Part shown: positions 42,416 through 64,000 of the stretch, one piece after another | Layout: each line of letters opens with the position of its first letter | Position numbering within the stretch: the stretch's first letter is position 1 | Virus record (IMG/VR): IMGVR_UViG_3300032214_000715 | Coordinates: 175,164-239,163 of that record | Length of the DNA: 64,000 nt | Strand: one strand, 5' to 3' | Program-made: the position numbers and the translations under genes | Notes under the pieces: model-generated | The model's input: only the letters and a program-made list of their open reading frames with translations | Databases searched by the model: none | Told to the model about the DNA's origin: nothing

Positions 42416-43873
42416 TCATTTATATTCTAGTTTCTCAAGCGTATAGGGATAATTTGCTTCCCTATAGAACTCTTTTCGTTTAGTTAGATGACGTTTTGCA
42501 AATTTACAACTACTGGTTATGTCCCAGATTTGAACGAAGTCTTTGTCCTCTGCTTTTCTAATGCCTCGCCCAATGCTTTGTATAACTCTGACAAAGCTTT
42601 TTCCGGGTTCCACAAGAACCAGATTAAAAATACGAGGAATATTAATACCCACAGCGGCCACACCATAAGTCGCCACAATAATCTTGTCATCACTAGTCGC
42701 AACTTCATCATATTCTTCTTTGCGTTCTTTTAGTTTTGTTTTGCCACGAATAAACACACTATTTGGTAATCTAGCAATCAACTCTTCTCCGGCAGCAACA
42801 CGATCAACCAATATTAATGTGTTGCCACTTTCTACAATTTTTTCAACCAAACTGCTGATAGTGTCTAGTCGTTTTCCATCAGTAAGTAAGTGAGTCAACT
42901 CACTTTGATAATCACGAAACTCAACGTGATCCTGCATCTGAACGATATTCACATGACACTGTGACAACACACCGGCATTTTGTAATTCGTTGGCACTTAG
43001 TTTACCAATTACTGAGCCTATACAAGTGAATAGCGCTTGACTGGCAAACTTATCTTTTGGTATGGTGCCAGTTAGCCCCCAACGAATCGGAATTTTAGAC
43101 ATCGTTCCGCTTAGCAATTGCTTTAGTGCGTCTGCTTTTACCGAATGGCATTCATCAATCATCAAGCATACTACACCCTCAATAAACTCATCAATAGTTA
43201 TGTCTGCTTCGCCATTCTTGGTGTTCTTTAGTAGATTGTTTAGACTTTGCCAAGTACAAATTGTATGCGTGTGACCTACTTCTTTGCGATCACCAAAATA
43301 GACTCCAACGTCTAACCCAAGATTTCTGTAGTCTGCTTCAGTCTGTGTTACAAGCGATTTGTTTGGCACAATCACTAAAGTTCTTCCGGAATTTTCGCAA
43401 CAATACGATAGTGCGGCCGTAATCAGTGTCTTTCCCGCGCCCGTAGCGACCTCTTGTATTGATTGTGGATTACTTAAGAAATTGTTTACAATGTCAACCT
43501 GATAGTCGCGCAACACTACAGGCTGCCCAACAAGTGGATGCCCCACAGGCCAAGTCTTGTTGGAAAAAGTGGCTTCTGTTATTTGATTAAAACTAAAATT
43601 GGTCTGATAGTCTCTTGTATCGTCTAGTTCAATATCATAATTGTGTTCTTCTAGATAAGGAAGAATTTCTTCTAACAGATTTATATAAGTGCTACCGCCT
43701 AATTGAAAGTAAGATGTTTTACCATTCCAACGTCCAAGTCTGACACTAGGTAGATATTTGGCACCTGGAATTTCATATTCAAATTTCTTTACCAAAGCAC
43801 GACGAGTATCTAAATCCAAGCCCTCTAGCTTGACGTTGACCTCATCGCGTATGATTATTTTACATTTCTTCAT
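42416..43873 (-). CDS. uvsW: UvsW-like SF2 DNA helicase
   Basis: LRDYQ; ATGAGKT; IDECH; GLTGT; VGINIP; QSIGRGIR; start MKKCK at 43873. Confidence 0.92.
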   Translation of the reverse strand: MKKCKIIIRDEVNVKLEGLDLDTRRALVKKFEYEIPGAKYLPSVRLGRWNGKTSYFQLGGSTYINLLEEILPYLEEHNYDIELDDTRDYQTNFSFNQITEATFSNKTWPVGHPLVGQPVVLRDYQVDIVNNFLSNPQSIQEVATGAGKTLITAALSYCCENSGRTLVIVPNKSLVTQTEADYRNLGLDVGVYFGDRKEVGHTHTICTWQSLNNLLKNTKNGEADITIDEFIEGVVCLMIDECHSVKADALKQLLSGTMSKIPIRWGLTGTIPKDKFASQALFTCIGSVIGKLSANELQNAGVLSQCHVNIVQMQDHVEFRDYQSELTHLLTDGKRLDTISSLVEKIVESGNTLILVDRVAAGEELIARLPNSVFIRGKTKLKERKEEYDEVATSDDKIIVATYGVAAVGINIPRIFNLVLVEPGKSFVRVIQSIGRGIRKAEDKDFVQIWDITSSCKFAKRHLTKRKEFYREANYPYTLEKLEYK

Positions 43874-43879
43874 TAAAGT

Positions 43880-43909
43880 AGTATACACAATTCACGTGTG
43901 AATTGTCAA
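43880..43909 (-). promoter_or_regulatory. Sigma70 promoter of the uvsW operon with palindromic spacer
   Basis: TTGACA-18 nt-TATACT; acaattcac-gt-gtgaattgt at 43887-43906. Confidence 0.7.
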
Positions 43910-44251: not shown

Positions 44252-44902
44252 ATGTTATTTAGTAAAAATAAACGAGATATTTCATATATAAAAATTTGGG
44301 TTGAACATCATGGTCCAATTCCATTAGATAAAAATGGAAGAAGAATGGAAATTCATCACATAGACGGTGATAAAACCAACAATAACATAAACAATCTTCA
44401 ACTACTGACAATTGAAGAACATTTTGATATTCATTACAAACAACAGGACTATGGATCTTGCTATCTAATTGCTATTAGAATGAAAAAATCACCAGAAGAA
44501 ATTTCTGATCTTGCTCGTCAAGCACAATTAAAAAGAGTGACAGACGGAACTCATCATTTTTTAGGCCCTGCTATGAATGCTAAAAGAGTGACAGCCGGAA
44601 CTCATCACTGGCTTGATGGAACAAAGTCCAGAGAGACTCAAAACAATCTTGTGAAAAGCGGAGTACACAGATTTGTCAATTCTGATTGGCAGAAAAATAA
44701 TCAACTCAGTCTAGTTGAGTCAGGAAAGCATAACTTTCTCGGCGGACATTTACAAAAATCATTGGTAAAATCAGGAAAGCATCATTTCGTGACATCCAAT
44801 CCAGGAAAGATTCAGTGGGTGTGCGAGAAATGCGGGAAAGAGGGAAAGGGAAAAACCAATTACGCTCGTTGGCATGGAGAAAATTGCGTAGTAAAAAAAT
44901 AG
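44252..44902 (+). mobile_element. Free-standing HNH homing endonuclease
   Basis: HHGPIP..EIHHIDGDKTNNNINNLQLL..EEH..IH; five GxH(H/N/R)(F/W) repeats; C-terminal CEKC..H..NC; opposite strand to neighbours. Confidence 0.88.
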
Positions 44903-44920
44903 GGAGCAATTGCTCCCTAT
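44893..44920 (-). terminator. Terminator between the ATPase and HNH genes
   Basis: atagggagcaattgctccctat palindrome followed by a T-run on the minus strand. Confidence 0.8.
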
Positions 44921-44935
44921 AACGTGTGATGAATT

Positions 44936-45982
44936 TCAGTTCTTAACGCAGCATGTCTCCAGCGCAAGCATCTTCCAGTCAGTGGGATCAATTCTATACA
45001 GATCAGCAATCTTGAGAGCCATACGCAAACTCAACTCGCGAAGAATTTCTTTATTAGCCCACATGAACTCCAGAATTTCTTCGGATTGATTGTCCAGAAA
45101 TTCGTAATCAGCAAACAGACCGCCAACCACATCTTGACTGGCATCGGTGTGTACCTGACGAATTCTCAACATTTTGTCACGCGAGGTATTGATCGTGAGA
45201 TCCAGATAGTGACACCGAGATTGCAGAGCGGACAAGTGAGCAGCAATCTTCTTAGAGCGACGGTCGCTAAGATCCAGATTCGTCACAAAGATGCACGCCC
45301 CGTTGAACTCAAAATCGGTGGGAATGCCTTCCTTACGAAGAAAAGACGAATCACTATTCCACCAAATACGACGGCGCTTACCCGAATCAAGTGCGGCCTT
45401 CAGAATGTTCAGCGCATCTGGGTCATCAAAAACGTCTACGTCATCAAAGACCAAAACATTCTTACTGTCGCTATACTTGTACAGCAGTGCGTACAAACCG
45501 ATGGCAGTAATAGCGCCCTTGACAATCTCAAAGCGAACACGCTTGCCTGCCAGCTTGTCAAACAGACTTGCCTTTTCCAGTTGAGTCTCAATACCAAACG
45601 ACTTGCCAACGCCAGGAGGGCCAGTAACGATCATAGCACGACAGTCGCCGTTGATCGTAGCCTTGGTCATGGTGTCAAGAATACGAAACCGGCGACGGAT
45701 GCGATCCATGGCCTGCTCGTCAGTTTCATTGGATTCGGTCATAACTTCTGGCGAGAATGCTACAATTTGAGTGGGACGCGAGTTACCGTTGACGAATTCA
45801 ACATCAGCAGAATCGGTGATTTCAATATAAACCTGCTTGGAATCTCCAGGCAGTTGACCGTCATTCTTAACTTGAACACGACCAGGAGTAGAATCCAGAG
45901 GACGAGCCAGCGTGAACATCATGTTCTCAACAGCAAAGTTCATCTTGCGATACACGCCGCGCTTGACAAGAATTTGAGCCAT
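44936..45982 (-). CDS. AAA+/P-loop ATPase (early gene)
   Basis: IVTGPPGVGKS; VLVFDDVD; IFVTN; ALQSRC arginine finger. Confidence 0.85.
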   Translation of the reverse strand: MAQILVKRGVYRKMNFAVENMMFTLARPLDSTPGRVQVKNDGQLPGDSKQVYIEITDSADVEFVNGNSRPTQIVAFSPEVMTESNETDEQAMDRIRRRFRILDTMTKATINGDCRAMIVTGPPGVGKSFGIETQLEKASLFDKLAGKRVRFEIVKGAITAIGLYALLYKYSDSKNVLVFDDVDVFDDPDALNILKAALDSGKRRRIWWNSDSSFLRKEGIPTDFEFNGACIFVTNLDLSDRRSKKIAAHLSALQSRCHYLDLTINTSRDKMLRIRQVHTDASQDVVGGLFADYEFLDNQSEEILEFMWANKEILRELSLRMALKIADLYRIDPTDWKMLALETCCVKN

Positions 45983-46155
45983 TTCGTTGATTCCTTATCT
46001 AACTGTCTAGAGAATGATTATAGTTGATTTTTGATTTATTGTCAAAAAATTTCGGAAGAAATTTATTGAAAAAATCAGCGAGTCAGTGTTGTTCGGAACT
46101 GTCTCTATCAACTCAACAACAATAGTATATCACTGCGTTGATTTATTGTCAAATT

Positions 46156-46908
46156 TCAGACAAAAATCTTGACGCGGTTAAATTGAGTCTTACCGTCGGT
46201 ATGATGAGCCTTGACAGTACCCTGAGCGGCAATCTTGCTTCCAACTTCAGGGTTAGACTTGTTGGAGAAGAAAACAACCTGATCATTGTCAGTAATCATA
46301 GTGACGAAATAGCAAGCCCATTGCTGACTATACACTGTACGAACGACTTCGCCCTTGAACGAAACCTTATCACCAACTTGTCCGACATGTCCACCTCGGG
46401 CATCGGCAATACGATCCTCTACCGATTGGCGAACTGTAGCACGTTCGTAACCTTGGGGCAGATACGCAACCGTACCCAGATCACGTTCGCTCACAGTTTC
46501 ACTGTTGGCAAGAGCAAGAGCCTTGGCATCAAATTCATTCAACACCTTGCCACCAAGAATCTTGAACATCAGACCCTTGTAATGTGTGCGGATCTTCTCG
46601 CCCATTTCACGGTCAAAGTCCGTAAGGGTAGATTGATCGGCAAGCATACGAACCATCAGTTCACGATTACTTTGCTTGGGAACAGCAACGCCATCAGCAT
46701 CAAGAGTGTAGGCACCAGCCTTGATATACTCATTTCCGACCGCACGATAGGCAGCGTAAGCAGCAGCAAACACCGTGCTGGTATCGTACATCATGGGTTG
46801 AGAACGCACGTAACGTTGGCTGCGTGTCGGCTTATAGCCTTCATCTGCTTGACACAGGGCCTTGACTTGAGAATTGGTCATACCAGAAACATCAACAAAA
46901 CCAGCCAT
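46156..46908 (-). CDS. Early protein with C-terminal OB-fold-like domain
   Basis: HVGQVGDKV...GTVKAH...TQFNRVK. Confidence 0.65.
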   Translation of the reverse strand: MAGFVDVSGMTNSQVKALCQADEGYKPTRSQRYVRSQPMMYDTSTVFAAAYAAYRAVGNEYIKAGAYTLDADGVAVPKQSNRELMVRMLADQSTLTDFDREMGEKIRTHYKGLMFKILGGKVLNEFDAKALALANSETVSERDLGTVAYLPQGYERATVRQSVEDRIADARGGHVGQVGDKVSFKGEVVRTVYSQQWACYFVTMITDNDQVVFFSNKSNPEVGSKIAAQGTVKAHHTDGKTQFNRVKIFV

Positions 46909-46964
46909 TTCGTACTCCGTTGTCTAACTCAGTGAATACAGTATATCAAAATCCGTATTATTTG

Positions 46965-47246
46965 TCAAATATTGCCGCAGGCTACATCAACCCGCAGATC
47001 GTGAATGCTGCCAAAGTATTCATTGACCAGCGTCTTCTTGCTCTCAGTGACCTTGTAGCGACCATAACGGTTCTTCTTGGCATTGATCACTCGTCCCTTG
47101 AACAAGAGCGTAGTGCTGGCATCATTACGAACCATTTCGACTTGTCGCATCGTTTCCAACCGCAGAGCACCCTGCTCTGCTCGGGCTAGGGCAAGGTCCT
47201 TTTCCAAAGAATCAATACGCTGTTGGATCTGTTCGAACTTGCTCAT
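46965..47246 (-). CDS. Small early hypothetical protein
   Basis: 93 aa; own promoter and RBS. Confidence 0.7.
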   Translation of the reverse strand: MSKFEQIQQRIDSLEKDLALARAEQGALRLETMRQVEMVRNDASTTLLFKGRVINAKKNRYGRYKVTESKKTLVNEYFGSIHDLRVDVACGNI

Positions 47247-47304
47247 TTCGTTTACTCCGTTATCTAACTCAACAAATACAGTATATCACCAAACCGATTT
47301 ACTG

Positions 47305-47757
47305 TCAAATTTTGAAACAAAGCCTAGATTTGATTTCTATGAAAAACTGATGGTACTTTGCCATACGGGCAATGTCCTTTTCACTGACCCCCTTCAGTCG
47401 GCGAATGTCGGTGTTGTGTCGAAGGTCTGCCATCTTGACACGCATAGCATCCTCACTAGCAAAGACACCTTCCTTGTATTCTTCGTAGGTCTGACCAGGG
47501 ACTTTTGTCAGTGCGCGGATACCACTGATTACTCTCTCACTGATGCCCGCGTCACGAAGGTCCTTGTATGTGACACTAGTGTCCTCGATAACATCGTGAC
47601 CTAGTGCGATACACATCAGTTCCTCATCATCGGTCTTGAGATAATGCATGACCTTAAGAGGGTGAAGAATGTAGGGATTGCCACCTTTGTCAAATTGATC
47701 GGCATGAGCATTAGTCGCAATGACTAGCATCTTGCCTAACATTTCACCTTTTCTCAT
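47305..47757 (-). CDS. HD-domain small alarmone ((p)ppGpp) hydrolase, SpoT/Mesh1-like
   Basis: AHADQFDKGGNPYILHPLKV; ALGHDVIEDT; VKMADLRHN. Confidence 0.85.
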   Translation of the reverse strand: MRKGEMLGKMLVIATNAHADQFDKGGNPYILHPLKVMHYLKTDDEELMCIALGHDVIEDTSVTYKDLRDAGISERVISGIRALTKVPGQTYEEYKEGVFASEDAMRVKMADLRHNTDIRRLKGVSEKDIARMAKYHQFFIEIKSRLCFKI

Positions 47758-47811
47758 TTTTCGGTCCTTTCTTTTACTGTAGTTACAGTATACTACCGAA
47801 CCGATTATTTG

Positions 47812-48087
47812 TCAAGCAGTCTCTAGCATGTTGGCAGGAACACGCCAACGAGTCATTCCTGTATCAACAACTACATTCTTGGTCATGATCTTGGATACCT
47901 TACCAACTTCAGTCTGTCCCGTACGGCTATTGACGAACTTCACCATAGAACCAATCGTTACGGAACGACGAGTCTGCTTTGCCAAATTACCACGTGCGAA
48001 CTTCACCGCAGAAATAATAGAATTCAACTGTTCATTGGTCAAGGACCCGAACATGATGCTAGAATTGATTTCTTGAATAGTAGCCAT
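47812..48087 (-). CDS. Small early protein, SH3/KOW-like
   Basis: IGSMVKF...GKVSKI..KNVVV..WRVPANMLE. Confidence 0.7.
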   Translation of the reverse strand: MATIQEINSSIMFGSLTNEQLNSIISAVKFARGNLAKQTRRSVTIGSMVKFVNSRTGQTEVGKVSKIMTKNVVVDTGMTRWRVPANMLETA

Positions 48088-48146
48088 TTCGTTTACTCCT
48101 GTTTTCTAACTCAGTGAATACAGTATATCAAAAATCGGATTTATTG

Positions 48147-48500
48147 TCAAACCCCGAGAACTTCGCGTTCCTCTTCGGACAACTTATTCAGTGCTGCCCT
48201 GCGAAGCATAGCCCTACGCTCGGCTTCGGCAGCCTGTGCTTCCTCACGGTCCAGAACGAATTCCAGATCGTAGAGTACTTCATCGGTTACTCCGTCGTAT
48301 TCCAACGCAAGGATGAAACCCTCATTATTCAGAGTTGCATCGAACATTCCGCGTCGAACGAAAACATCACCGCCCAACTTGTTCAAGCGTTCCAGAGCAG
48401 CCATCAATCGTGCAGGGTACGTCGCCCGGGCTTCTGCGATCTGCGCGTTCCGCAGTGCGTCACGTTCTGCCATCAGTTCTGCTTTAGTCTTACGTGCCAT
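48147..48500 (-). CDS. Small early hypothetical protein
   Basis: Start ATG at 48500 after GGAG (MARKTKAEL); ends ALNKLSEEEREVLGV. Confidence 0.75.
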   Translation of the reverse strand: MARKTKAELMAERDALRNAQIAEARATYPARLMAALERLNKLGGDVFVRRGMFDATLNNEGFILALEYDGVTDEVLYDLEFVLDREEAQAAEAERRAMLRRAALNKLSEEEREVLGV

Positions 48501-48559
48501 TTTGTGCTCCTGTTTTCTAACTTGAATACAGTATATCAAAAAACGGATTTATTGTCAAA

Positions 48560-48730
48560 TTACTGAGACTCAACGCTACATTCGCATTCATAATCAGTCG
48601 ACTTACGATTAGGATTTTTCTCCCACTCGGCCCAGGCAGCTTCCTCAATTTCATCTTCGCTTGCTTCATTCAAAACATCAAAGACAACACGATAGGTTAC
48701 AGTCTCGGTAAAAATAGCAACGCGGCGCAT
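48560..48730 (-). CDS. Small acidic early protein (56 aa)
   Basis: AAGGA RBS; MRRVAIFTETVTYRVVFDV...SVESQ*. Confidence 0.65.
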   Translation of the reverse strand: MRRVAIFTETVTYRVVFDVLNEASEDEIEEAAWAEWEKNPNRKSTDYECECSVESQ

Positions 48731-48741
48731 TTGTTTGTCCT

Positions 48742-49002
48742 TTACAGAGTATTCAGTGTCGCTTGTAGTTCAGTAAAAGTCTTATAGACTTGAGAGCCAT
48801 CACGACTAGTACGCAAGATCATAAAGTTACGATTGTAGATTTCTACAGTGGCATCTAATGTGCGAGCGCGACCAAAAGTGATGGCAAGATACTTGCGTCC
48901 ATTCTTACTGGTCTGCTCACTGGTAAGAATGCCGTATGGCGCATTGAAATTTCTAGACTTGACAAACGTTTCAATCGCCGAAAGTATTGCTTGACTGTTC
49001 AT
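48742..49002 (-). CDS. Small early hypothetical protein
   Basis: 86 aa; ITFGRARTLDATVEIY. Confidence 0.65.
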   Translation of the reverse strand: MNSQAILSAIETFVKSRNFNAPYGILTSEQTSKNGRKYLAITFGRARTLDATVEIYNRNFMILRTSRDGSQVYKTFTELQATLNTL

Positions 49003-49005
49003 TCT

Positions 49006-49119
49006 TCAACCAAATTCATTGTAAATTTGAATATCTTGCTCGTATTGTTCAACAAAAGCGAGAAAAGCAGCATCTTCATCGTGCTGTTGATCCGTCAACT
49101 CTGGCTGTGTAGTGTTCAT
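49006..49119 (-). CDS. Very small acidic early peptide (37 aa)
   Basis: GGAG RBS; MNTTQPELTDQQHDEDAAFLAFVEQYEQDIQIYNEFG*; first ORF after the promoter at 49148-49176. Confidence 0.55.
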   Translation of the reverse strand: MNTTQPELTDQQHDEDAAFLAFVEQYEQDIQIYNEFG

Positions 49120-49237
49120 CAACATCTCCAACTGATTCAATACTGGTAGTATAGCAGGACCATGATTTATTGTCAAATTGTGAAACTAAAAGTAAATCAT
49201 CTCCAGGAAACAATTATGTTCGAGGAAGACTTTCGCG

Positions 49238-49693
49238 TCACAACTCATAGCCATCAAGGCCAGCTGCCTTCAACTTGATCAAGTGGCCAAGCATGAAGTT
49301 CTTAGACTCTAACGCTTTGAGAACTCCCAAGTAGCGATTTCTAATGAGTGCCACCTCATTTATTAGTATCTCAAAATCAATCACTTCATTTTCACCGTCC
49401 ACGTATTTCTCAGCATCTCGACTTGTCAACGCACGATTGTACCCTTCTAAGTACTTCTGAAAGTACTTGCGTCGGAGAGCCCGCAACTTGATGTTGAGAT
49501 AGTTTAGTACTGCCTCAATATCCTGTAGACTGGCAAAATAGGACTCTGTTAGTCCTGGCATCATAAAGACATTCTTCTCTACTCTGCCAGAAATCTTGAC
49601 ATCCTGTTTTGCCGTCTCCAACTGTTGCTCATAATAAGCAACAAAGTCAGGCAGAACACCTAGGTCAGCAGTAATTCTACTGTACCAATTCAT
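49238..49693 (-). CDS. uvsY: UvsY-like recombination mediator
   Basis: YLEGYNRALTSRDAEKYVDGE...RNRYLGVLKALESK; near recA. Confidence 0.7.
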   Translation of the reverse strand: MNWYSRITADLGVLPDFVAYYEQQLETAKQDVKISGRVEKNVFMMPGLTESYFASLQDIEAVLNYLNIKLRALRRKYFQKYLEGYNRALTSRDAEKYVDGENEVIDFEILINEVALIRNRYLGVLKALESKNFMLGHLIKLKAAGLDGYEL

Positions 49694-49697
49694 TTAA

Positions 49698-49973
49698 TTA
49701 CTCATCGTAATCTTCTTCGTCACCAAAGCCTAATTCTTCATAGTTATCATCGTAGTCATCCAAATTTTCCGACGTATCTTCGCTATAGAACTTTACAGCG
49801 TCAAGTACGTCCCGATCACCGTCAAATTCATGACGAATGTCCTCTAAATCAAAATCATACTCCATAAGTAGCGTCACCATACTATCTGCTAGTTGCGTCT
49901 TATCATCTGGTGTTACATACTCGCTCATCATATTCCAAATATCAGCAATTGCGGCTAGGGCTGATTTACTCAT
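49698..49973 (-). CDS. Small acidic hypothetical protein
   Basis: 91 aa, Asp/Glu-rich tail. Confidence 0.6.
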   Translation of the reverse strand: MSKSALAAIADIWNMMSEYVTPDDKTQLADSMVTLLMEYDFDLEDIRHEFDGDRDVLDAVKFYSEDTSENLDDYDDNYEELGFGDEEDYDE

Positions 49974-51030
49974 CTTCTACTTCCTCCGTTACTTGAATGT
50001 TGATTTCTTGATCGCGTAAAGAAAATTCTTTCATTACTAGATCCATGATTCCATTTTCATTTTTATTCCACTCTTTGCGAAAGTATTTATGTACTTCTCC
50101 ATTCAAATCTGTATATGAATAACGATTTCCCTCTTTCTTAATAAGTTGTCGCTTTTCAATCAAATCAAAAAATCCACTGTAAGGATTCATACCCGTGCTA
50201 TATGGAATTTGAATTTGAATGTCTTCAAATGGCTTAGCGTATCGGGTCTTCATAATTTTACAACCAGCACGAATTCCAAGTACATCGCTTACTTTGTTGC
50301 CATCCTCGTCTTCTTTTAGTTTCAACTTCTTCATTGCTACCAGAATAGAACTGGCATACACGAATCCCTGACCACCGCTAACTACTGGGTCTGGATTATA
50401 TGGGTCCTGACTAGCATAGCTATGATTGGTAGCTACTAATCCAACATTATGATTACCAAACATATTTACGCAATTGGTAACTAATGCCTTAAGAGCCTTT
50501 GCTTTTCGCCCCATATCTCCCTTCATGTCACCCGCTTCAAACTGATTGAGTTCAGTAGGCGACATCAGCATTCCAAGGCTATCAATTACAAATAAAACTT
50601 TGAGACGAGCTTCTGCTGGCATTTCCTTGTAGTCGCTCATGAACTTTGAAATTGTCTTAGCAACATCGTCAATCATTGCCATAGATAACTTGAGTAATTT
50701 TTCTTCGCTAGTATCAACGCCCAATGCTTTTAGCCAACTTTCGTCAAGAGCATTTTCGGTATCAATTAATACTACAAAAATGCCCTGTTCTTGAGCATGT
50801 CGCACTAGATTGCCACTACAAATGTAGCTTTTTCCGCTACCGCTTTCTCCAGCAAATACAGTTACTTTTCCTAGAGGAACGCCCTTGTTAAAGTCCCCGC
50901 TAATCAGATAATTCAGTGCGTAATTGCCTGTGTTGACCCAATCAGTGGGATCATTAAATCCGATACTAAGACCATCAATACTCTTGGTCAGTTCTCGTCT
51001 AAATTTTGAAATGTCGAACGGTTTTGTCAT
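49966..51030 (-). CDS. uvsX: RecA/UvsX recombinase
   Basis: TGNYALN..ISG..GVPLGKVTVFAGESGSGKS; IDTENALD; VIDSLG; ATNH; KTR. Confidence 0.93.
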   Translation of the reverse strand: MTKPFDISKFRRELTKSIDGLSIGFNDPTDWVNTGNYALNYLISGDFNKGVPLGKVTVFAGESGSGKSYICSGNLVRHAQEQGIFVVLIDTENALDESWLKALGVDTSEEKLLKLSMAMIDDVAKTISKFMSDYKEMPAEARLKVLFVIDSLGMLMSPTELNQFEAGDMKGDMGRKAKALKALVTNCVNMFGNHNVGLVATNHSYASQDPYNPDPVVSGGQGFVYASSILVAMKKLKLKEDEDGNKVSDVLGIRAGCKIMKTRYAKPFEDIQIQIPYSTGMNPYSGFFDLIEKRQLIKKEGNRYSYTDLNGEVHKYFRKEWNKNENGIMDLVMKEFSLRDQEINIQVTEEVEDE

Positions 51031-51032
51031 AT

Positions 51033-51272
51033 TTACTTTCCATTAACTACTTGTTTATTACTATACACGCTAAACGGCTGCGTGTCTAATAATTCCGGGC
51101 ACTTTTCTGCCAATCTTTCAAATTCATAGTCATTTGGGTAGTGACGCAAAATAGCACGAACTCGCTGACGCACAATGCTTGGAACACGTGGTGTTTTTCC
51201 TGGGTCAGTTAGTTCTTGTAGTAATTTTTTACCCTGAACCAAAGACCGATATCTTTCATCCGGCAGTGTCAT
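51033..51272 (-). CDS. Small protein (BPSL0761-like)
   Basis: MTLPDERYRS...PRVPSIVRQR..ILRHYP. Confidence 0.6.
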   Translation of the reverse strand: MTLPDERYRSLVQGKKLLQELTDPGKTPRVPSIVRQRVRAILRHYPNDYEFERLAEKCPELLDTQPFSVYSNKQVVNGK

Positions 51273-51293
51273 ATTAAACCTCCATTGTATAGA

Positions 51294-51321
51294 ATAGTAC
51301 CCAGAATATTCTGGGTACTAT
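51294..51321. terminator. Perfect palindrome downstream of the SSB gene (terminator or processing site)
   Basis: atagtacccagaatattctgggtactat; weak U-tract. Confidence 0.55.
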
Positions 51322-51336
51322 AAACACTATAAGCTT

Positions 51337-52383
51337 TTAAGCTACTTTGTTTTGCCTTGAGCGAATCATCGCCAAAATGTCTTGAGTTTTTTCGCTAGTT
51401 TGCTTCGGTGGAACCTTTACCTCAACTGCTGGCGCTGGTTCTTCCCAAGGAGCTGATTCCTCAACTGTCGCCTTTACTGCTGGCTTAGAAACAAAAGTAG
51501 CGGTACGCGTTGACTTGCTTGATTCGTCAAATTCGGGAACATCAGCATCTTCAGATGAAGATCCAGAGGTCTGAAGGCCCCAAGGCTTGTAGTAAGACGC
51601 CCACTTATCCGGATCGTACATACGTCCATCAACGCTAGCCTCAAACATATCCTTGATGATGCGAACTTCACTTTCGCTGGGCTTCTTAGGCAAGAATTCC
51701 TTTAGATTGTACAACCCATAAGCATCAATCGCCGCACGTTCTGCTTCAGTAAGAGCGGTAGGACCCTTCATAAATGACCAGTCGCTAGTACTCCAGTCCG
51801 CGTATCCACCTGGATTCTTGGAGCGAATAACCTTGAAGTCTAGACCTTGATTGAAGTCGCTAGGCATAACATCAAACTCTGGATCAAGCAAACTCTTCTT
51901 AATGTTCTTAAAGATTTGAGGGGTAATGATAAAGCGACGAATCGGATTCTCTGGTTGTTCATCGTCTGGTAAGCCATTTGTACGAACAAAGCCCTGTAGT
52001 AAATAACTACGCTTCTTCCAGTACTTGTTGGCGGTTTCCTTTAGACTTTCATCCTTGTACCAAGTGCGAACTTCTGCCAGAACTGGGCACTTTTCGCTTT
52101 CGCCGTACATTTCAATACACGGCACTTGAACCACGACTTCCTTGTTTTCATTTTGACCCTTAATGCCAGCAAATGGCAGTTTGATCATTTGACGCTCAAT
52201 CCAAAAATATACGTTATCGGTATCGCCGTCCGGTAGAAAACGAAGCGAAGAGCTTGCTCCTTCAGGCAAATTCCAGTGAGCGTAGATGGACTTATCTCCA
52301 CCGATCTTCTGTGATTGTTGTTGATTTTGTTGTGAACGATTTTCTTGTGCCTGTAGTTTGGCACGCAATGCTGCTAGTGACAT
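51337..52383 (-). CDS. Single-stranded DNA-binding protein (T4 gp32-like)
   Basis: LRFLPD; C..MY...CPV; YWKKRSY; DFKVI...YADWSTS; acidic/low-complexity tail. Confidence 0.88.
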   Translation of the reverse strand: MSLAALRAKLQAQENRSQQNQQQSQKIGGDKSIYAHWNLPEGASSSLRFLPDGDTDNVYFWIERQMIKLPFAGIKGQNENKEVVVQVPCIEMYGESEKCPVLAEVRTWYKDESLKETANKYWKKRSYLLQGFVRTNGLPDDEQPENPIRRFIITPQIFKNIKKSLLDPEFDVMPSDFNQGLDFKVIRSKNPGGYADWSTSDWSFMKGPTALTEAERAAIDAYGLYNLKEFLPKKPSESEVRIIKDMFEASVDGRMYDPDKWASYYKPWGLQTSGSSSEDADVPEFDESSKSTRTATFVSKPAVKATVEESAPWEEPAPAVEVKVPPKQTSEKTQDILAMIRSRQNKVA

Positions 52384-62530: not shown

Positions 62531-64000
62531 TTATAAGAATGGGTTAAGCGTCGATGTAAACGCGTTGCCGACGTTAGTGATAGTAACATTATTAATACTT
62601 TTGTCAACAATTGATTCGCTTTGACATGTCAACAATGCTGTGTTTGTTATAGCAGTTAATGGTGATGTGGGCACACTAACACCACTAGGATAAACTCCGG
62701 ATCCTCTTACTATTCTAAAATTACTTATAAAAGATTTACTGAGATATTGACTACCATATCCTCCCCCAATAGCAAAGTTTCCACCATAACTTATATAGTC
62801 GCCCCCCACTGATACATTATCCTCACCATTTATTGTTAATTTAGTTGATCCGTTAATTCTACTGATTACTAAGTGATACCAGGTATTTGTCGTCACTATA
62901 GCCATTGTCCCTCCGCCACCTTCGCCAACACCTCCAGCGACCATAAACAATGAATTGTTTTGTACTCTAAGCAGTAATCCATTGGGGTTGGCGGGGTATT
63001 TCAATCCTCCAGTTGTAGTGCTGATCTGCCATACCACTCTATTTTCTGTAGCATCAGTAAAAAGTACCCAACACTCTACAGTGAAATCCCCCGTACCTAG
63101 CGCAGGTATTACGCCATTCAAATAACTACTTCCGTCAAAGTTGACACTGTTATAACCAGAACCATCAGAACCACCACCGGTACCTCCGCCTCCGCCTCCG
63201 CCGCCTCCTCCAGATGCTAGAGAAATTTCAACTCCACACCATCCAGTAGTCCAGTTTGTGGTTGTTACTCCATTGGCTGTGGTGCCTGAATAATTTTGTA
63301 AGTACCCAACAAAATTTTTAGTTATCGTAGCAGTAGCTCCAGGGGCAACTAACCCGGCGTGAACGGCAGCTACGGCAAAATCCGAATCCTGTGTGTAAGG
63401 ATTTGAGCCCCACACTGTGGTGCCAGTTAATGACCCAGTTACTGTTTGAGTTGCTGATGTTGCTTCGTTACAAATCGTAACGCTGTCGGCGTTTATTTCT
63501 ATAGCTGTCGATGGCATATTAATATTTATAGAACTTACTTGATCGACAGACCAATAATCCCAACTATTAGATATATATCCATCACTTTCTATAGTCGCTG
63601 TCGTCGGCATACTTCTATTAGTTGATCCAATAAAATTATTATCCCAAAAATTCCAACTATTAGGTATATATCCATTGCTTTCTAATACGGCAGTAGTCGG
63701 CATATTCAAGTTAGTAGAACTAACCATACCGCTTGTCCATGTACTCCAATCAACATTTAACTCAATTCTATATACATAAGCACTGCCAGCATCAGTAAAT
63801 CCGCTATGATCGTCAAGATATGCGCCAACTACAATAAGATCACCACTTATACTTATTGAAACTCCAAAACTGTCAATTCCAGCAGCATCACTAGCTGTTA
63901 ATTTTTGTTCTTGTACCCAACTAGTTCCGTTATATCTATATACATACGCACTACCAGCATCAGTAAATTCACTATGATCGTCTTGTCTTGATCCAACTAC
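62531..64000 (-). CDS. Multidomain adhesin-like protein, partial: FG-GAP repeats, LCCL, Gly linker, LamG/ConA
   Basis: Frame open past the window end: DAGSAYVY x2, FGVSISISGDLIVVGA; VWGSNPYTQDSDFAVAAVHAG..Y.GTTANGVTT; FDGSSYL..GTGDFTVECWV. Confidence 0.78.
   Translation of the reverse strand, partial: VVGSRQDDHSEFTDAGSAYVYRYNGTSWVQEQKLTASDAAGIDSFGVSISISGDLIVVGAYLDDHSGFTDAGSAYVYRIELNVDWSTWTSGMVSSTNLNMPTTAVLESNGYIPNSWNFWDNNFIGSTNRSMPTTATIESDGYISNSWDYWSVDQVSSININMPSTAIEINADSVTICNEATSATQTVTGSLTGTTVWGSNPYTQDSDFAVAAVHAGLVAPGATATITKNFVGYLQNYSGTTANGVTTTNWTTGWCGVEISLASGGGGGGGGGGTGGGSDGSGYNSVNFDGSSYLNGVIPALGTGDFTVECWVLFTDATENRVVWQISTTTGGLKYPANPNGLLLRVQNNSLFMVAGGVGEGGGGTMAIVTTNTWYHLVISRINGSTKLTINGEDNVSVGGDYISYGGNFAIGGGYGSQYLSKSFISNFRIVRGSGVYPSGVSVPTSPLTAITNTALLTCQSESIVDKSINNVTITNVGNAFTSTLNPFL

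What the first reader, a model, noticed from the sequence alone, without database searches (positions are those of the whole stretch)
46963..48150. Stop codons are built into the -35 box (T-TGA-CA) of the next cassette
Seen: four consecutive ORFs end with a TGA that is the TGA of TTGACA (stops at 46965, 47305, 47812 and 48147). Two more stop 1-3 nt before the box (46156, 48560). Most other genes in the window end in TAA. Inference: the repeat supplies the stop codon to whatever ORF is inserted upstream. This suggests the cassette junction lies at or just before the -35 hexamer, and that ribosomes terminate on the sequence of the next promoter.
Basis: seen in the sequence. Interest (0 to 1): 0.68.

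Follow-up and report, generated by a model that had tools for sequence, protein, structure and literature searches.

The report
Stop codons embedded in promoter -35 boxes
In this freshwater jumbo phage and its relatives, about a third of the small genes that are followed by their neighbour's promoter end on the TGA inside that promoter's TTGACA box. This is real and far above chance, but it is best read as extreme gene packing around shuffled promoter-plus-gene units, not as a special insertion mechanism.

Summary
On the minus strand, four consecutive ORFs end on the TGA of T-TGA-CA (stops at 46965, 47305, 47812, 48147). Two more end 3 nt and 1 nt before a box.

The box is the left edge of a roughly 60-nt promoter-leader repeat: TTGACA, 17 nt, TG-extended TATACT, a conserved leader, GGAG, then ATG. 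The 239-kb phage record holds 41 copies, all co-oriented with the genes. In 12 copies the upstream ORF ends on the box TGA (uniform-offset null p=4e-8; frame null p=2e-5).

In related environmental contigs the same overlap occurs in 80 of 234 distinct promoter contexts, covering 61 different gene pairs.

Homologues not followed by a promoter end at the same residue, within 0-3 aa, mostly with TAA. So the box lies over the natural ORF end; it neither truncates nor extends the protein.

Gene order is heavily shuffled. The HD gene keeps its own -10/leader whatever lies upstream, and at least 10 different gene families abut its -35 in frame. However, synteny breaks are not enriched at promoter junctions. 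The genome also has 27 ATGA stop/start overlaps.

Best reading: a packing solution at the edge of modular promoter-gene units. The closest known system is the PeSL cassettes of T4-type phages, but without their stem-loop.

The parts
48501..48558 (-). Promoter-leader module: -35 TTGACA at 48558-48553, TG-extended -10 TATACT at 48535-48530, leader with GGAG, next ATG at 48500. The upstream ORF 48560-48730 ends with TAA 1 nt before the box.
48147..48500 (-). ORF of 117 aa (P0004, unknown function). Its stop TGA at 48149-48147 lies inside the -35 hexamer 48150-48145.
   Evidence: Homologues end at the same position, LLNL/LLGL, with TAA, with an ATGA-type TGA, or in a -35 box.
48088..48150 (-). Promoter-leader module: -35 at 48150-48145, -10 at 48127-48122, next ATG at 48087.
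   Evidence: Related contigs diverge at 48151.
47812..48087 (-). ORF of 91 aa (P0003, unknown function). Its stop TGA at 47814-47812 lies inside the -35 hexamer 47815-47810.
   Evidence: Homologues have the same C-terminus LETA with TGA or TAA and no promoter behind.
47758..47815 (-). Promoter of the HD gene: -35 at 47815-47810, -10 at 47792-47787. It has a gene-specific palindromic -10/leader (ACTGTA-NN-TACAGT) that travels with the HD gene in relatives.
   Evidence: fold z = -3.3
47305..47757 (-). ORF of 150 aa, an HD-domain metal-dependent phosphohydrolase (P0002). Its stop TGA at 47307-47305 lies inside the -35 hexamer 47308-47303. Its last 3 residues (FKI) are extra relative to most homologues and are encoded by the A-rich flank of the next promoter.
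47247..47308 (-). Promoter-leader module: -35 at 47308-47303, -10 at 47285-47280, next ATG at 47246.
46965..47246 (-). ORF of 93 aa (P0001, unknown function, rare). Its stop TGA at 46967-46965 lies inside the -35 hexamer 46968-46963.
   Evidence: The homologue in L084 also ends in the box. The homologue in L083 has the same length with its own TAA 10 nt before a different promoter.
46909..46968 (-). Promoter-leader module: -35 at 46968-46963, -10 at 46945-46940, next ATG at 46908. From the -35 box through the leader it differs from L084 at only one base, although the flanking proteins are about 76% identical.
46156..46908 (-). ORF of 250 aa with a C-terminal OB-fold-like domain (P0005). Its stop TGA at 46158-46156 lies 3 nt before the next -35 box.
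46046..46152 (-). Promoter module with no ORF behind it: -35 at 46152-46147, -10 at 46129-46124, then about 78 nt non-coding. The relative L002 has a single promoter here. It may be the remnant of a lost gene unit or a tandem promoter.
   Evidence: fold not significant
45983..46045 (-). Promoter module with a perfect TTGACA-17-TATAAT (46045-46017), next ATG at 45982.
44936..45982 (-). ORF of 348 aa, an AAA-type ATPase and the last gene of the array.
44899..44920 (-). The only convincing intrinsic terminator of the array: a 9-bp stem with 5 G-C pairs followed by 7 T.
   Evidence: A weak hairpin-type Rfam hit lies at the same place.
49126..49176 (-). First promoter of the array: -35 at 49176-49171, -10 at 49153-49148. 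It lies 64 nt after the stop of the UvsY-like gene 49238-49693.

Best explanation
The window is the recombination/replication region of an uncultured freshwater jumbo phage. It encodes gp32-like, UvsX-like, UvsY-like and UvsW-like proteins.

Many of its small genes carry their own promoter-leader module of about 60 nt. The module is a consensus sigma-70-type -35 box, a 17-nt spacer, a TG-extended -10 box, a conserved leader and a GGAG ribosome site. Between 49176 and 44936, eight such modules sit in one direction with a single terminator at the end, so transcripts from upstream promoters run through the downstream modules.

No spare DNA is left between a gene and the next module. The upstream ORF either stops 1-15 nt before the box, or its natural stop is superimposed on the TGA of T-TGA-CA. 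That is the closest packing possible without making protein sequence and promoter sequence constrain each other over more than 4 nt. It is the promoter-junction counterpart of the ATGA stop/start overlap that the same genome uses at least 27 times.

The units (promoter from the -10 onward, leader and gene) are reshuffled freely among related phages. Each new junction is again driven to this packed state, probably by deletion bias and selection for compactness. The overlap has therefore arisen many times, in 61 different gene pairs.

What is shown: the anatomy, the statistics, the unchanged C-termini, the recurrence across relatives and the shuffling.

What is inferred: that the modules are active promoters, and that compaction rather than a junction-specific recombination reaction creates the overlap.
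For: - Anatomy and counts.
- Non-randomness: (p=4e-8 for offset, 2e-5 and 3e-3 for frame, 1e-4 for TGA context).
- Relatives: 257 strict promoter matches on the gene strand against 1 on the other. Upstream stops fall at +1 in 80 of 234 contexts and at +8 (TAA of TTGACAAATAAT) in 10, against 2-11 at each offset from -12 to -3. There are 86 such junctions in 61 distinct gene-family pairs and 47 upstream families.
- C-termini unchanged: median tail difference 0 aa both for box-terminated members (39 of 64 at 0) and for members without a promoter behind (67 of 131 at 0). The latter use TAA 82, TGA 42, TAG 7, which is the background usage.
- Single cases: HD ends RLG with five different downstream promoter units, with its own TGA (L055) or with TAA (L035). 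Family 12 ends K-TAA, KG-TGA (in the box) or DK-TAA (box read in another frame). The P0001 homologue in L083 has the same length with TAA plus a 10-nt spacer.
- General packing: ATGA overlaps at 27 of 183 promoter-less junctions, and a gap of 0 or less at 50 of 183. More than a third of TGA stops sit in ATGA contexts.
- ORFs rarely read deeper into the module (1 of 13 in this record; a few at +8, +11 or +20 in relatives).
- Synteny breaks are equally common at junctions with and without promoters: 82% against 81%, rho 0.14, p 0.23.
Against: - There are no transcription data. No RNA run holds the sequence, so promoter activity and read-through are inferred from consensus only.
- The share of maximally packed junctions is higher at promoters (about 45% here, 34% in relatives) than the single-offset ATGA share (15%). 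Compaction alone may therefore not be the whole story.
- The indel against L084 is bounded by the two boxes. Contigs of very close relatives join different genes within the modules. Both fit recombination between the repeats.
- Gene calls and family clustering were crude home-made ones, and the related contigs are not phylogenetically independent.
- The record is about 68% complete.
Confidence: 0.6

Rival explanations
1. Recombination model, close to the reader's idea and to PeSL cassettes. The promoter-leader repeats are the crossover sites at which gene units are exchanged by the phage's own UvsX/UvsY/gp32/UvsW machinery or by short-homology recombination. Because the ORF end lies inside the repeat, any crossover within the repeat leaves both ORFs intact. 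The in-box stop would then be a product of this cassette exchange, or be selected for it.
For: - The repeat is bounded by the -35 box and the ATG.
- The HD unit is present in the window and absent in L084, and the difference is bounded by two TTGACA boxes.
- Contigs of close relatives (95-99% identical pieces) join 46905 to 47244 and 48093 to 46913, that is, at the leader/ATG edge of modules, giving other gene orders.
- The HD-specific -10/leader travels with HD behind at least 10 upstream families.
- UvsX-, UvsY-, gp32- and UvsW-like genes flank the array.
- In PeSL cassettes, crossovers were mapped between the -10 and the ATG (PMC2839356).
Against: - Synteny breaks are not enriched at promoter junctions.
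- The joints rest on sides of only 29-42 nt in short metagenome contigs.
- C-termini equal those of homologues without any promoter behind, so the box did not 'supply' an end to a foreign ORF.
- Homologues without a promoter show no excess of TGA that would indicate a TTGA microhomology route.
- No mini-circle or duplication evidence could be sought.
Confidence: 0.25
2. Regulatory model. Ending translation exactly at the -35 box has a function of its own. It could keep ribosomes off the leader of the next gene on read-through transcripts, or shorten the untranslated gap and so limit Rho-type polarity.
For: ORFs that enter the module stop at its first possible codon in 12 of 13 cases and almost never reach the leader. 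The array has no internal terminators.
Against: About half of the junctions have a separate stop 1-15 nt upstream with the same kind of promoter. The other-frame overlaps at +8 and +20 exist in relatives. A tested idea of pairing between the promoter spacer and the ribosome site showed no signal. There is no experimental handle here.
Confidence: 0.07
3. Stop-seeded promoters. The -35 boxes arose in place from pre-existing T-TGA stops, which already give 4 of the 6 bases, rather than being brought in with a repeat.
For: Some homologues without a promoter end with T-TGA at the same codon: family 7 in L011 and HD in L055.
Against: The modules are long repeats of about 60 nt with a conserved leader, in 41 copies. 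The HD gene's module is conserved with the gene across many genomes. Homologues without a promoter show no excess of TGA.
Confidence: 0.05
4. Chance or composition. TTGACA simply happens to follow T-ending codons.
For: TGA is a common stop here, 37%.
Against: p=4e-8, 2e-5 and 1e-4 in three different nulls. There is strict strand bias, 41 against 0. The overlap recurs in 61 gene pairs in relatives.
Confidence: 0.01

Closest known systems
PeSL (promoter-early stem-loop) regulatory cassettes of T4-type phages (Arbiol et al. 2010, PMC2839356; Comeau et al. 2014, PMC4122927)
   Same: Both are repeated, near-consensus sigma-70-type promoters, co-oriented and placed between small variable genes in hyperplastic regions of large T4-related myoviruses. 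Neighbouring genes are gained, lost and reshuffled between relatives. The repeat spans from the end of the upstream gene to the next ATG. The phage has its own UvsX-type recombination system.
   Different: PeSLs carry a stem-loop that acts as a terminator. The window's modules show none (z about 0), although a relative (L083) has a 7-bp stem between -35 and -10. In PeSLs the upstream stop lies in an AT-rich stretch before the -35 (legend of Fig. 2). In RB49 itself only 3 of 27 TTGACA-type promoter matches have the stop inside the box and there is no spike, against 12 of 41 here and 80 of 234 in relatives. The phage is not a T4-like virus in the strict sense: its nearest cultured relatives by helicase, at 50-54% aa identity, are Phosso, Atu_ph07 and PA5oct.
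ATGA / TAATG stop-start overlaps in compact phage and bacterial operons
   Same: One stop codon shares bases with the next functional signal. There is a sharp spike at a single offset. It uses TGA and leaves the protein end unchanged. The same genome has 27 ATGA overlaps.
   Different: The shared signal here is a transcription signal on DNA (the -35 hexamer), not the next start codon. There is no translational coupling, because the next ATG is about 60 nt away.
Integron gene cassettes (attC sites, IntI integrase)
   Same: An array of short, co-oriented, promoter-dependent ORFs separated by a repeated element.
   Different: There is no tyrosine recombinase in the 239-kb record. The repeat is a promoter, not a folded attC. 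Every unit has its own promoter instead of one common Pc.
Internal promoters overlapping the 3' end of the upstream gene (general feature of phages such as T7 and T4, and of bacterial operons; from general knowledge)
   Same: Promoter elements overlap coding sequence, and transcripts are nested.
   Different: Here the overlap is stereotyped to one register (T-TGA-CA) and recurs in a third of the promoters of a whole clade.

Membership tests
Sigma-70-type (housekeeping) bacterial promoter used by a phage | -35 TTGACA and -10 TATAAT-like hexamers 16-18 nt apart | tested here: met
   9 matches in the window against 0.39 expected, at 11-12 of 12 positions. 41 copies in the record.
Sigma-70-type (housekeeping) bacterial promoter used by a phage | Placed upstream of genes and co-oriented with them, at a fixed distance from the ribosome site and start codon | tested here: met
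   All 41 copies are on the gene strand. GGAG and ATG follow 25-35 nt after the -10 in most copies.
Sigma-70-type (housekeeping) bacterial promoter used by a phage | Transcription starts 6-8 nt after the -10 | not testable with these tools
   No RNA run holds the sequence. The host is unknown.
PeSL regulatory cassette | Strong sigma-70-like early promoter repeated in the genome | tested here: met
PeSL regulatory cassette | Stem-loop within or next to the promoter that acts as a terminator | tested here: not met
   Five of the seven modules folded gave z-scores from -1.2 to +0.8. The exceptions are the HD promoter palindrome (z = -3.3) and the UvsW-gene promoter with its spacer inverted repeat (z = -1.5). 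No terminator-like sites lie between the genes of the array. A relative, L083, does have a 7-bp stem between -35 and -10.
PeSL regulatory cassette | Located in hyperplastic regions, flanking variable or ORFan genes | tested here: met
   The neighbours of the HD gene differ in nearly every related contig, with 38 different downstream partners in 77 junctions. P0001 was found in only two other contigs.
PeSL regulatory cassette | Recombination between copies creates indels, replacements or mini-circles | tested here: inconclusive
   The indel against L084 is bounded by two boxes. Joints lie at module edges in short contigs. However, breaks are not enriched at promoter junctions. Mini-circles are not testable.
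PeSL regulatory cassette | Host genome is a T4-like myovirus (Straboviridae) | tested here: not met
   T4-type UvsW, UvsX, UvsY and gp32 homologues are present. The nearest cultured phages, at about 50% aa identity, are the jumbo phages Phosso, Atu_ph07 and PA5oct (Arenbergviridae). There is no near DNA match.
Integron cassette array | Tyrosine-recombinase integrase | tested here: not met
   No PF00589 match in the 239-kb record, while the controls were positive. The record is about 68% complete.
Integron cassette array | attC-type imperfect inverted repeat at the cassette boundary | tested here: not met
   The boundary element is the promoter module, with no consistent fold. There were no Rfam matches.

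The most novel reading that the evidence does not exclude
The promoter-leader module may be the exchange site of a gene-cassette system in a large clade of freshwater jumbo phages. Recombination within the conserved 13-nt -35 element or the leader, carried out by the phage's own UvsX/UvsY/gp32 machinery, would move units that are 'ORF-safe' because the preceding gene's stop codon is part of the repeat. Back-up stops exist in the other frames: TAA at +8, TGA of the extended -10 at +20, and TAG in the leader. The in-box stop would then be a selected design feature of modular exchange, not just packing.
Probability: 0.2. Interest if true: 0.65.

Novelty: new variant of a known kind. Interest (0 to 1): 0.42.

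Why it matters
It shows how far signal overlap can go in a large phage genome. One hexamer serves both as RNA-polymerase contact and as translation stop at a third of the promoters of a whole, widespread, uncultured clade.

It also gives annotators of such phages practical rules:
- Gene ends at T-TGA-CA mark promoters.
- Start codons lie about 60 nt further on.
- TTG 'starts' inside the module are artefacts.

The data extend the PeSL picture of promoter-bounded, shuffled gene units beyond T4-like phages to distant jumbo phages, in a form without the stem-loop. If the recombination reading were right, the modules would be natural, ORF-safe junctions for modular gene exchange.

Tried and rejected
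- Near-identity search in cultured phages found nothing. A distant search found only HD-gene matches.
- The PA5oct helicase neighbourhood has no comparable promoter array and was not informative.
- RNA evidence: no RNA run holds the region. Read laying could use DNA contigs only.
- Stem-loop or terminator inside the modules: not found.
- Rfam gave only a weak hairpin hit at the array's terminator.
- Idea that the promoter spacer pairs with the ribosome site, so that only the gene's own transcript is translated: native duplex energy -4.81 against -4.72 for permuted partners, so rejected.
- Idea that an ancestral T-TGA stop offers microhomology to TTGACA: homologues without a promoter show no excess of TGA, so it is not supported, though not excluded.
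- Enrichment of synteny breaks at promoter junctions: none.
- Integron-like system: no integrase.
- Stop-codon reassignment: no suppressor tRNA, and homologues end with TAA at the same codon. Table 11 was used throughout.
- 'Closed in all three frames' as a conserved design: the TGA of the extended -10 is typical of this genome only. Relatives have other bases there.
- One pattern scan returned nothing because I miscounted the spacer. It was corrected. An exact-match search for the 46968 promoter found only the same genome.
- The big protein searches, structure prediction and complex prediction were not needed and not used.
Full report
**What is there.**
The window is the last 64 kb of a single-contig 239,163-bp virus record with 39.8% G+C, estimated about 68% complete. 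In the region of the finding all genes are on the minus strand. Read on that strand, a repeat of about 60 nt precedes most small genes. It consists of:
- TTGACA, usually continued as ATAAATC;
- a variable stretch of about 8 nt;
- TG-A-TATACT;
- a conserved leader (GTATTCA, with or without CTG, then AGTTAGAAAACAGGAG);
- ATG 5-8 nt further on.

This is a consensus sigma-70-type promoter with 17-nt spacing and an extended -10, followed by a leader and a ribosome site. The window has 9 such sites between 49176 and 43880, against 0.39 expected. A weight matrix finds 41 in the whole record. All are on the gene strand, and none on the other strand or in a shuffle scores above 15.

**Checking the observation.**
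The four consecutive ORFs are 48147-48500, 47812-48087, 47305-47757 and 46965-47246. Each ends with the TGA that forms bases 2-4 of the next TTGACA. ORF 46156-46908 ends with TGA 3 nt before a box. ORF 48560-48730 ends with TAA 1 nt before a box. So the coordinates and the description are right.

The remark on TAA is only partly right. A crude gene call gives TAA 39, TGA 20, TAG 5 in the window, and 131, 87, 17 on the minus strand of the record. Most TGA stops lie either in ATGA overlaps with the next start or in TTGACA. TGA is a real stop: no suppressor tRNA is among the 27 tRNA genes, and homologues stop at the same codon with TAA.

**Is it more than chance?**
In the whole record the upstream ORF ends at offset +1 of the box in 12 of 41 copies. 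It ends 3-15 nt before the box in about 12-13 copies (the statistics count 25 ORF ends in this range), at +20 (the TGA of TG-A-TATACT) in one, and never in the leader. The remaining copies follow non-coding or tRNA regions. Offsets -2 to 0 cannot hold a stop.
- Twelve of 25 ends at one of 14 possible offsets gives p=4e-8.
- Twelve of 13 ORFs that enter the box use the TGA frame, p=2e-5.
- Sixteen of 26 nearby ORF ends are in that frame, p=3e-3.
- Among called TGA stops, 9 of 87 have the TTGACA context against 1.9 expected from non-stop TGAs, p=1e-4.

**Relatives.**
No cultured phage is close. The UvsW-like helicase is 50-54% identical to those of the jumbo phages Phosso, Atu_ph07 and PA5oct. 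IMG/VR, however, holds many related contigs. Eighty loci were fetched around homologues of the HD-domain gene at 75-95% aa identity, with a few more from other queries.

In these loci, strict promoter matches number 257 on the gene strand and 1 on the other. Among 234 distinct contexts with an upstream ORF, 80 have the stop at +1 and 10 at +8 (the TAA of TTGACAAATAAT). Every offset from -12 to -3 holds only 2-11. The +1 junctions involve 61 different pairs of gene families and 47 different upstream families. The overlap has therefore been formed or kept many times. Another contig of the same sample shows two ORFs ending at +20 and none at +1 among seven promoters, so the rule is strong but not absolute.

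The four genes give these comparisons:
- The HD protein ends after a conserved ...EIKxRL with a free tail of 1-6 residues. The tail is V, G, A or T before an in-box TGA, and EVK, EEK or QKE before its own TAA or TAG when no promoter follows. The identical end RLG occurs with five different downstream promoter units, with its own TGA (L055) and with TAA (L035). The window's copy is 3 residues longer (CFKI). These residues are encoded by the A-rich flank (CAAAAT) that precedes many boxes in this genome.
- P0003 ends LETA, exactly like homologues that have TGA or TAA and no promoter behind.
- P0004 ends where its homologues end.
- P0001 has the same length as its homologue in L083, which uses TAA and a 10-nt spacer.

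Over 30 families, the tail length relative to the last well-occupied alignment column has median 0, both for in-box ends (39 of 64 at 0) and for ends without a promoter (67 of 131). The latter use TAA, TGA and TAG at background rates. So the box is laid over the natural end of the ORF. It does not cut or lengthen proteins, apart from 1-3 residues in a minority.

**Where are the unit borders?**
Five results bear on this:
- Information content of the repeat is near zero up to -6 and maximal from the first T of the box.
- When contigs of four aquatic and freshwater metagenome runs were laid on 44900-49300, their matches to the modules broke off at 48151, 48558/48561 and 46974 (just 5' of a box). 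They also broke off at 48498 and 48096 (the ATG or the end of the leader). The flanks differed on both sides.
- The HD gene's module has a gene-specific -10/leader, with the palindrome ACTGTA-NN-TACAGT. It stays with the HD gene in dozens of genomes. The gene upstream varies, and at least 10 different families end in frame on its box. In other genomes a hairpin terminator precedes it.
- Contig L084 has the order family 7, P0001 homologue, P0005 homologue, without the HD unit. The 507-nt difference from the window runs from one TTGACA to the next.
- In short contigs of very close relatives, the leader of one module is joined to the coding start of another gene (46905 to 47244; 48093 to 46913). 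This suggests other gene orders, but the joined sides are only 29-42 nt.

They are compatible with recombination between the repeats.

**Why I still rank packing first.**
Gene order around the HD gene is scrambled everywhere, not only at promoters. Junction states with an alternative downstream neighbour elsewhere make up 81% without a promoter, 82% with an in-box stop and 74% with a spaced promoter. A family's share of promoter junctions does not predict its neighbour diversity (rho 0.14, p 0.23).

The genome is tightly packed in general. Of 183 promoter-less junctions, 27 are ATGA overlaps, 8 are one-base overlaps, and 50 have no gap at all. T-TGA-CA is the same trick applied to a promoter. 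It is the first register in which a stop can share bases with the box. It costs the protein nothing beyond a last codon ending in T, and going deeper would force promoter-encoded residues onto the protein. That happens only rarely (+8, +11, +20). Repeated small deletions in a size-limited genome would drive spaced junctions into this end state. That step is inferred, not shown.

**Comparison with the known.**
The closest described system is the PeSL cassette of T4-type phages. PeSLs are repeated sigma-70-like early promoters with a stem-loop, lying between variable genes of hyperplastic regions. They recombine to give indels and mini-circles, with crossovers mapped between the -10 and the ATG (PMC2839356, PMC4122927).

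The present modules share the promoter, the location, the shuffling and the T4-type recombination genes next door: gp32-, UvsX-, UvsY- and UvsW-like. They lack the defining stem-loop, and the phage is only distantly related to T4-like viruses.

In PeSLs the upstream stop lies in an AT-rich stretch before the -35. In RB49 itself I found the in-box stop at only 3 of 27 TTGACA-type promoter matches, with no spike. A text search found no paper describing a systematic stop/-35 overlap. That shows only that none is in the library under those words. An integron-like system is excluded as far as tested: no integrase and no attC-like fold.

**Verdict.**
But the protein ends are the natural ones, and the best explanation is packing at the edge of modular promoter-gene units, with recombination between the repeats as a live rival. 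It is a new variant of a known kind. Interest is moderate.

**Limits.**
- There is no expression evidence, and the host is unknown.
- Gene calling and clustering were home-made.
- The related contigs are not independent samples.
- The record is incomplete.

Noticed in passing
window 43874-43909 (minus strand): In the promoter of the UvsW-like helicase gene (42416-43873) the ATG lies only 6 nt after the -10, so the mRNA would be leaderless or nearly so. A 7-bp inverted repeat (AATTCAC-AC-GTGAATT) fills the -35/-10 spacer, like an operator. Relatives show many TATAAT-N6-7-ATG starts as well.
   Followed up: partly
window 47758-47815 (minus strand) and homologous sites in L004-L060: The HD gene's promoter carries a palindrome ACTGTA-NN-TACAGT overlapping the -10 and the start site. 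It is conserved with the gene in dozens of related contigs whatever lies upstream. The fold z-score is -3.3. It may be an operator for an unknown regulator.
   Followed up: partly
window 46046-46152 (minus strand): A full promoter module has no ORF behind it, about 78 nt before the next promoter. The relative L002 has one promoter here. It could be the scar of a lost gene unit, a tandem promoter or a short RNA. The fold is not significant.
   Followed up: partly
window 44252-44902 (plus strand): The only opposite-strand gene of the region encodes an HNH endonuclease (PF13392, E=7e-13) with a weak NADAR-like C-terminal part. It sits between the array's terminator and the UvsW promoter and contains a 26-nt direct repeat at 44531 and 44582. 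It is probably a homing endonuclease.
   Followed up: no
window 49238-52383 (minus strand): A T4-type recombination set lies just upstream of the array: a gp32-like gene (51337-52383), a UvsX/RecA-like gene (49966-51030) and a UvsY-like gene (49238-49693).
   Followed up: partly
L083 (metagenome contig), promoters at 760, 1136, 1777, 2125: A related phage uses a different promoter family with a 7-bp stem (ACAGGGA ... [quoted passage not shown] This is the classic PeSL layout. One of its upstream ORFs also ends on the box TGA.
   Followed up: partly
whole record G000, about 60.8-87.6 kb (outside the window): A cluster of 27 tRNA genes includes two with odd anticodon loops. The same promoter modules precede tRNA or non-coding stretches there.
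   Followed up: no
window 63551-64000: Direct repeats of 66-80 nt at 75-83% identity, spaced 93 and 168 nt apart, lie at the very end of the contig. They suggest a repetitive protein domain such as a fibre or adhesin.
   Followed up: no
G000 copies at genome 67696, 84126, 47686, 85101, 125702: In a subset of modules the box is preceded by (A)CCAAAAT, with the upstream stop (TAA or TGA) directly before it. The repeat may therefore extend about 8 nt further 5' in some copies.
   Followed up: no
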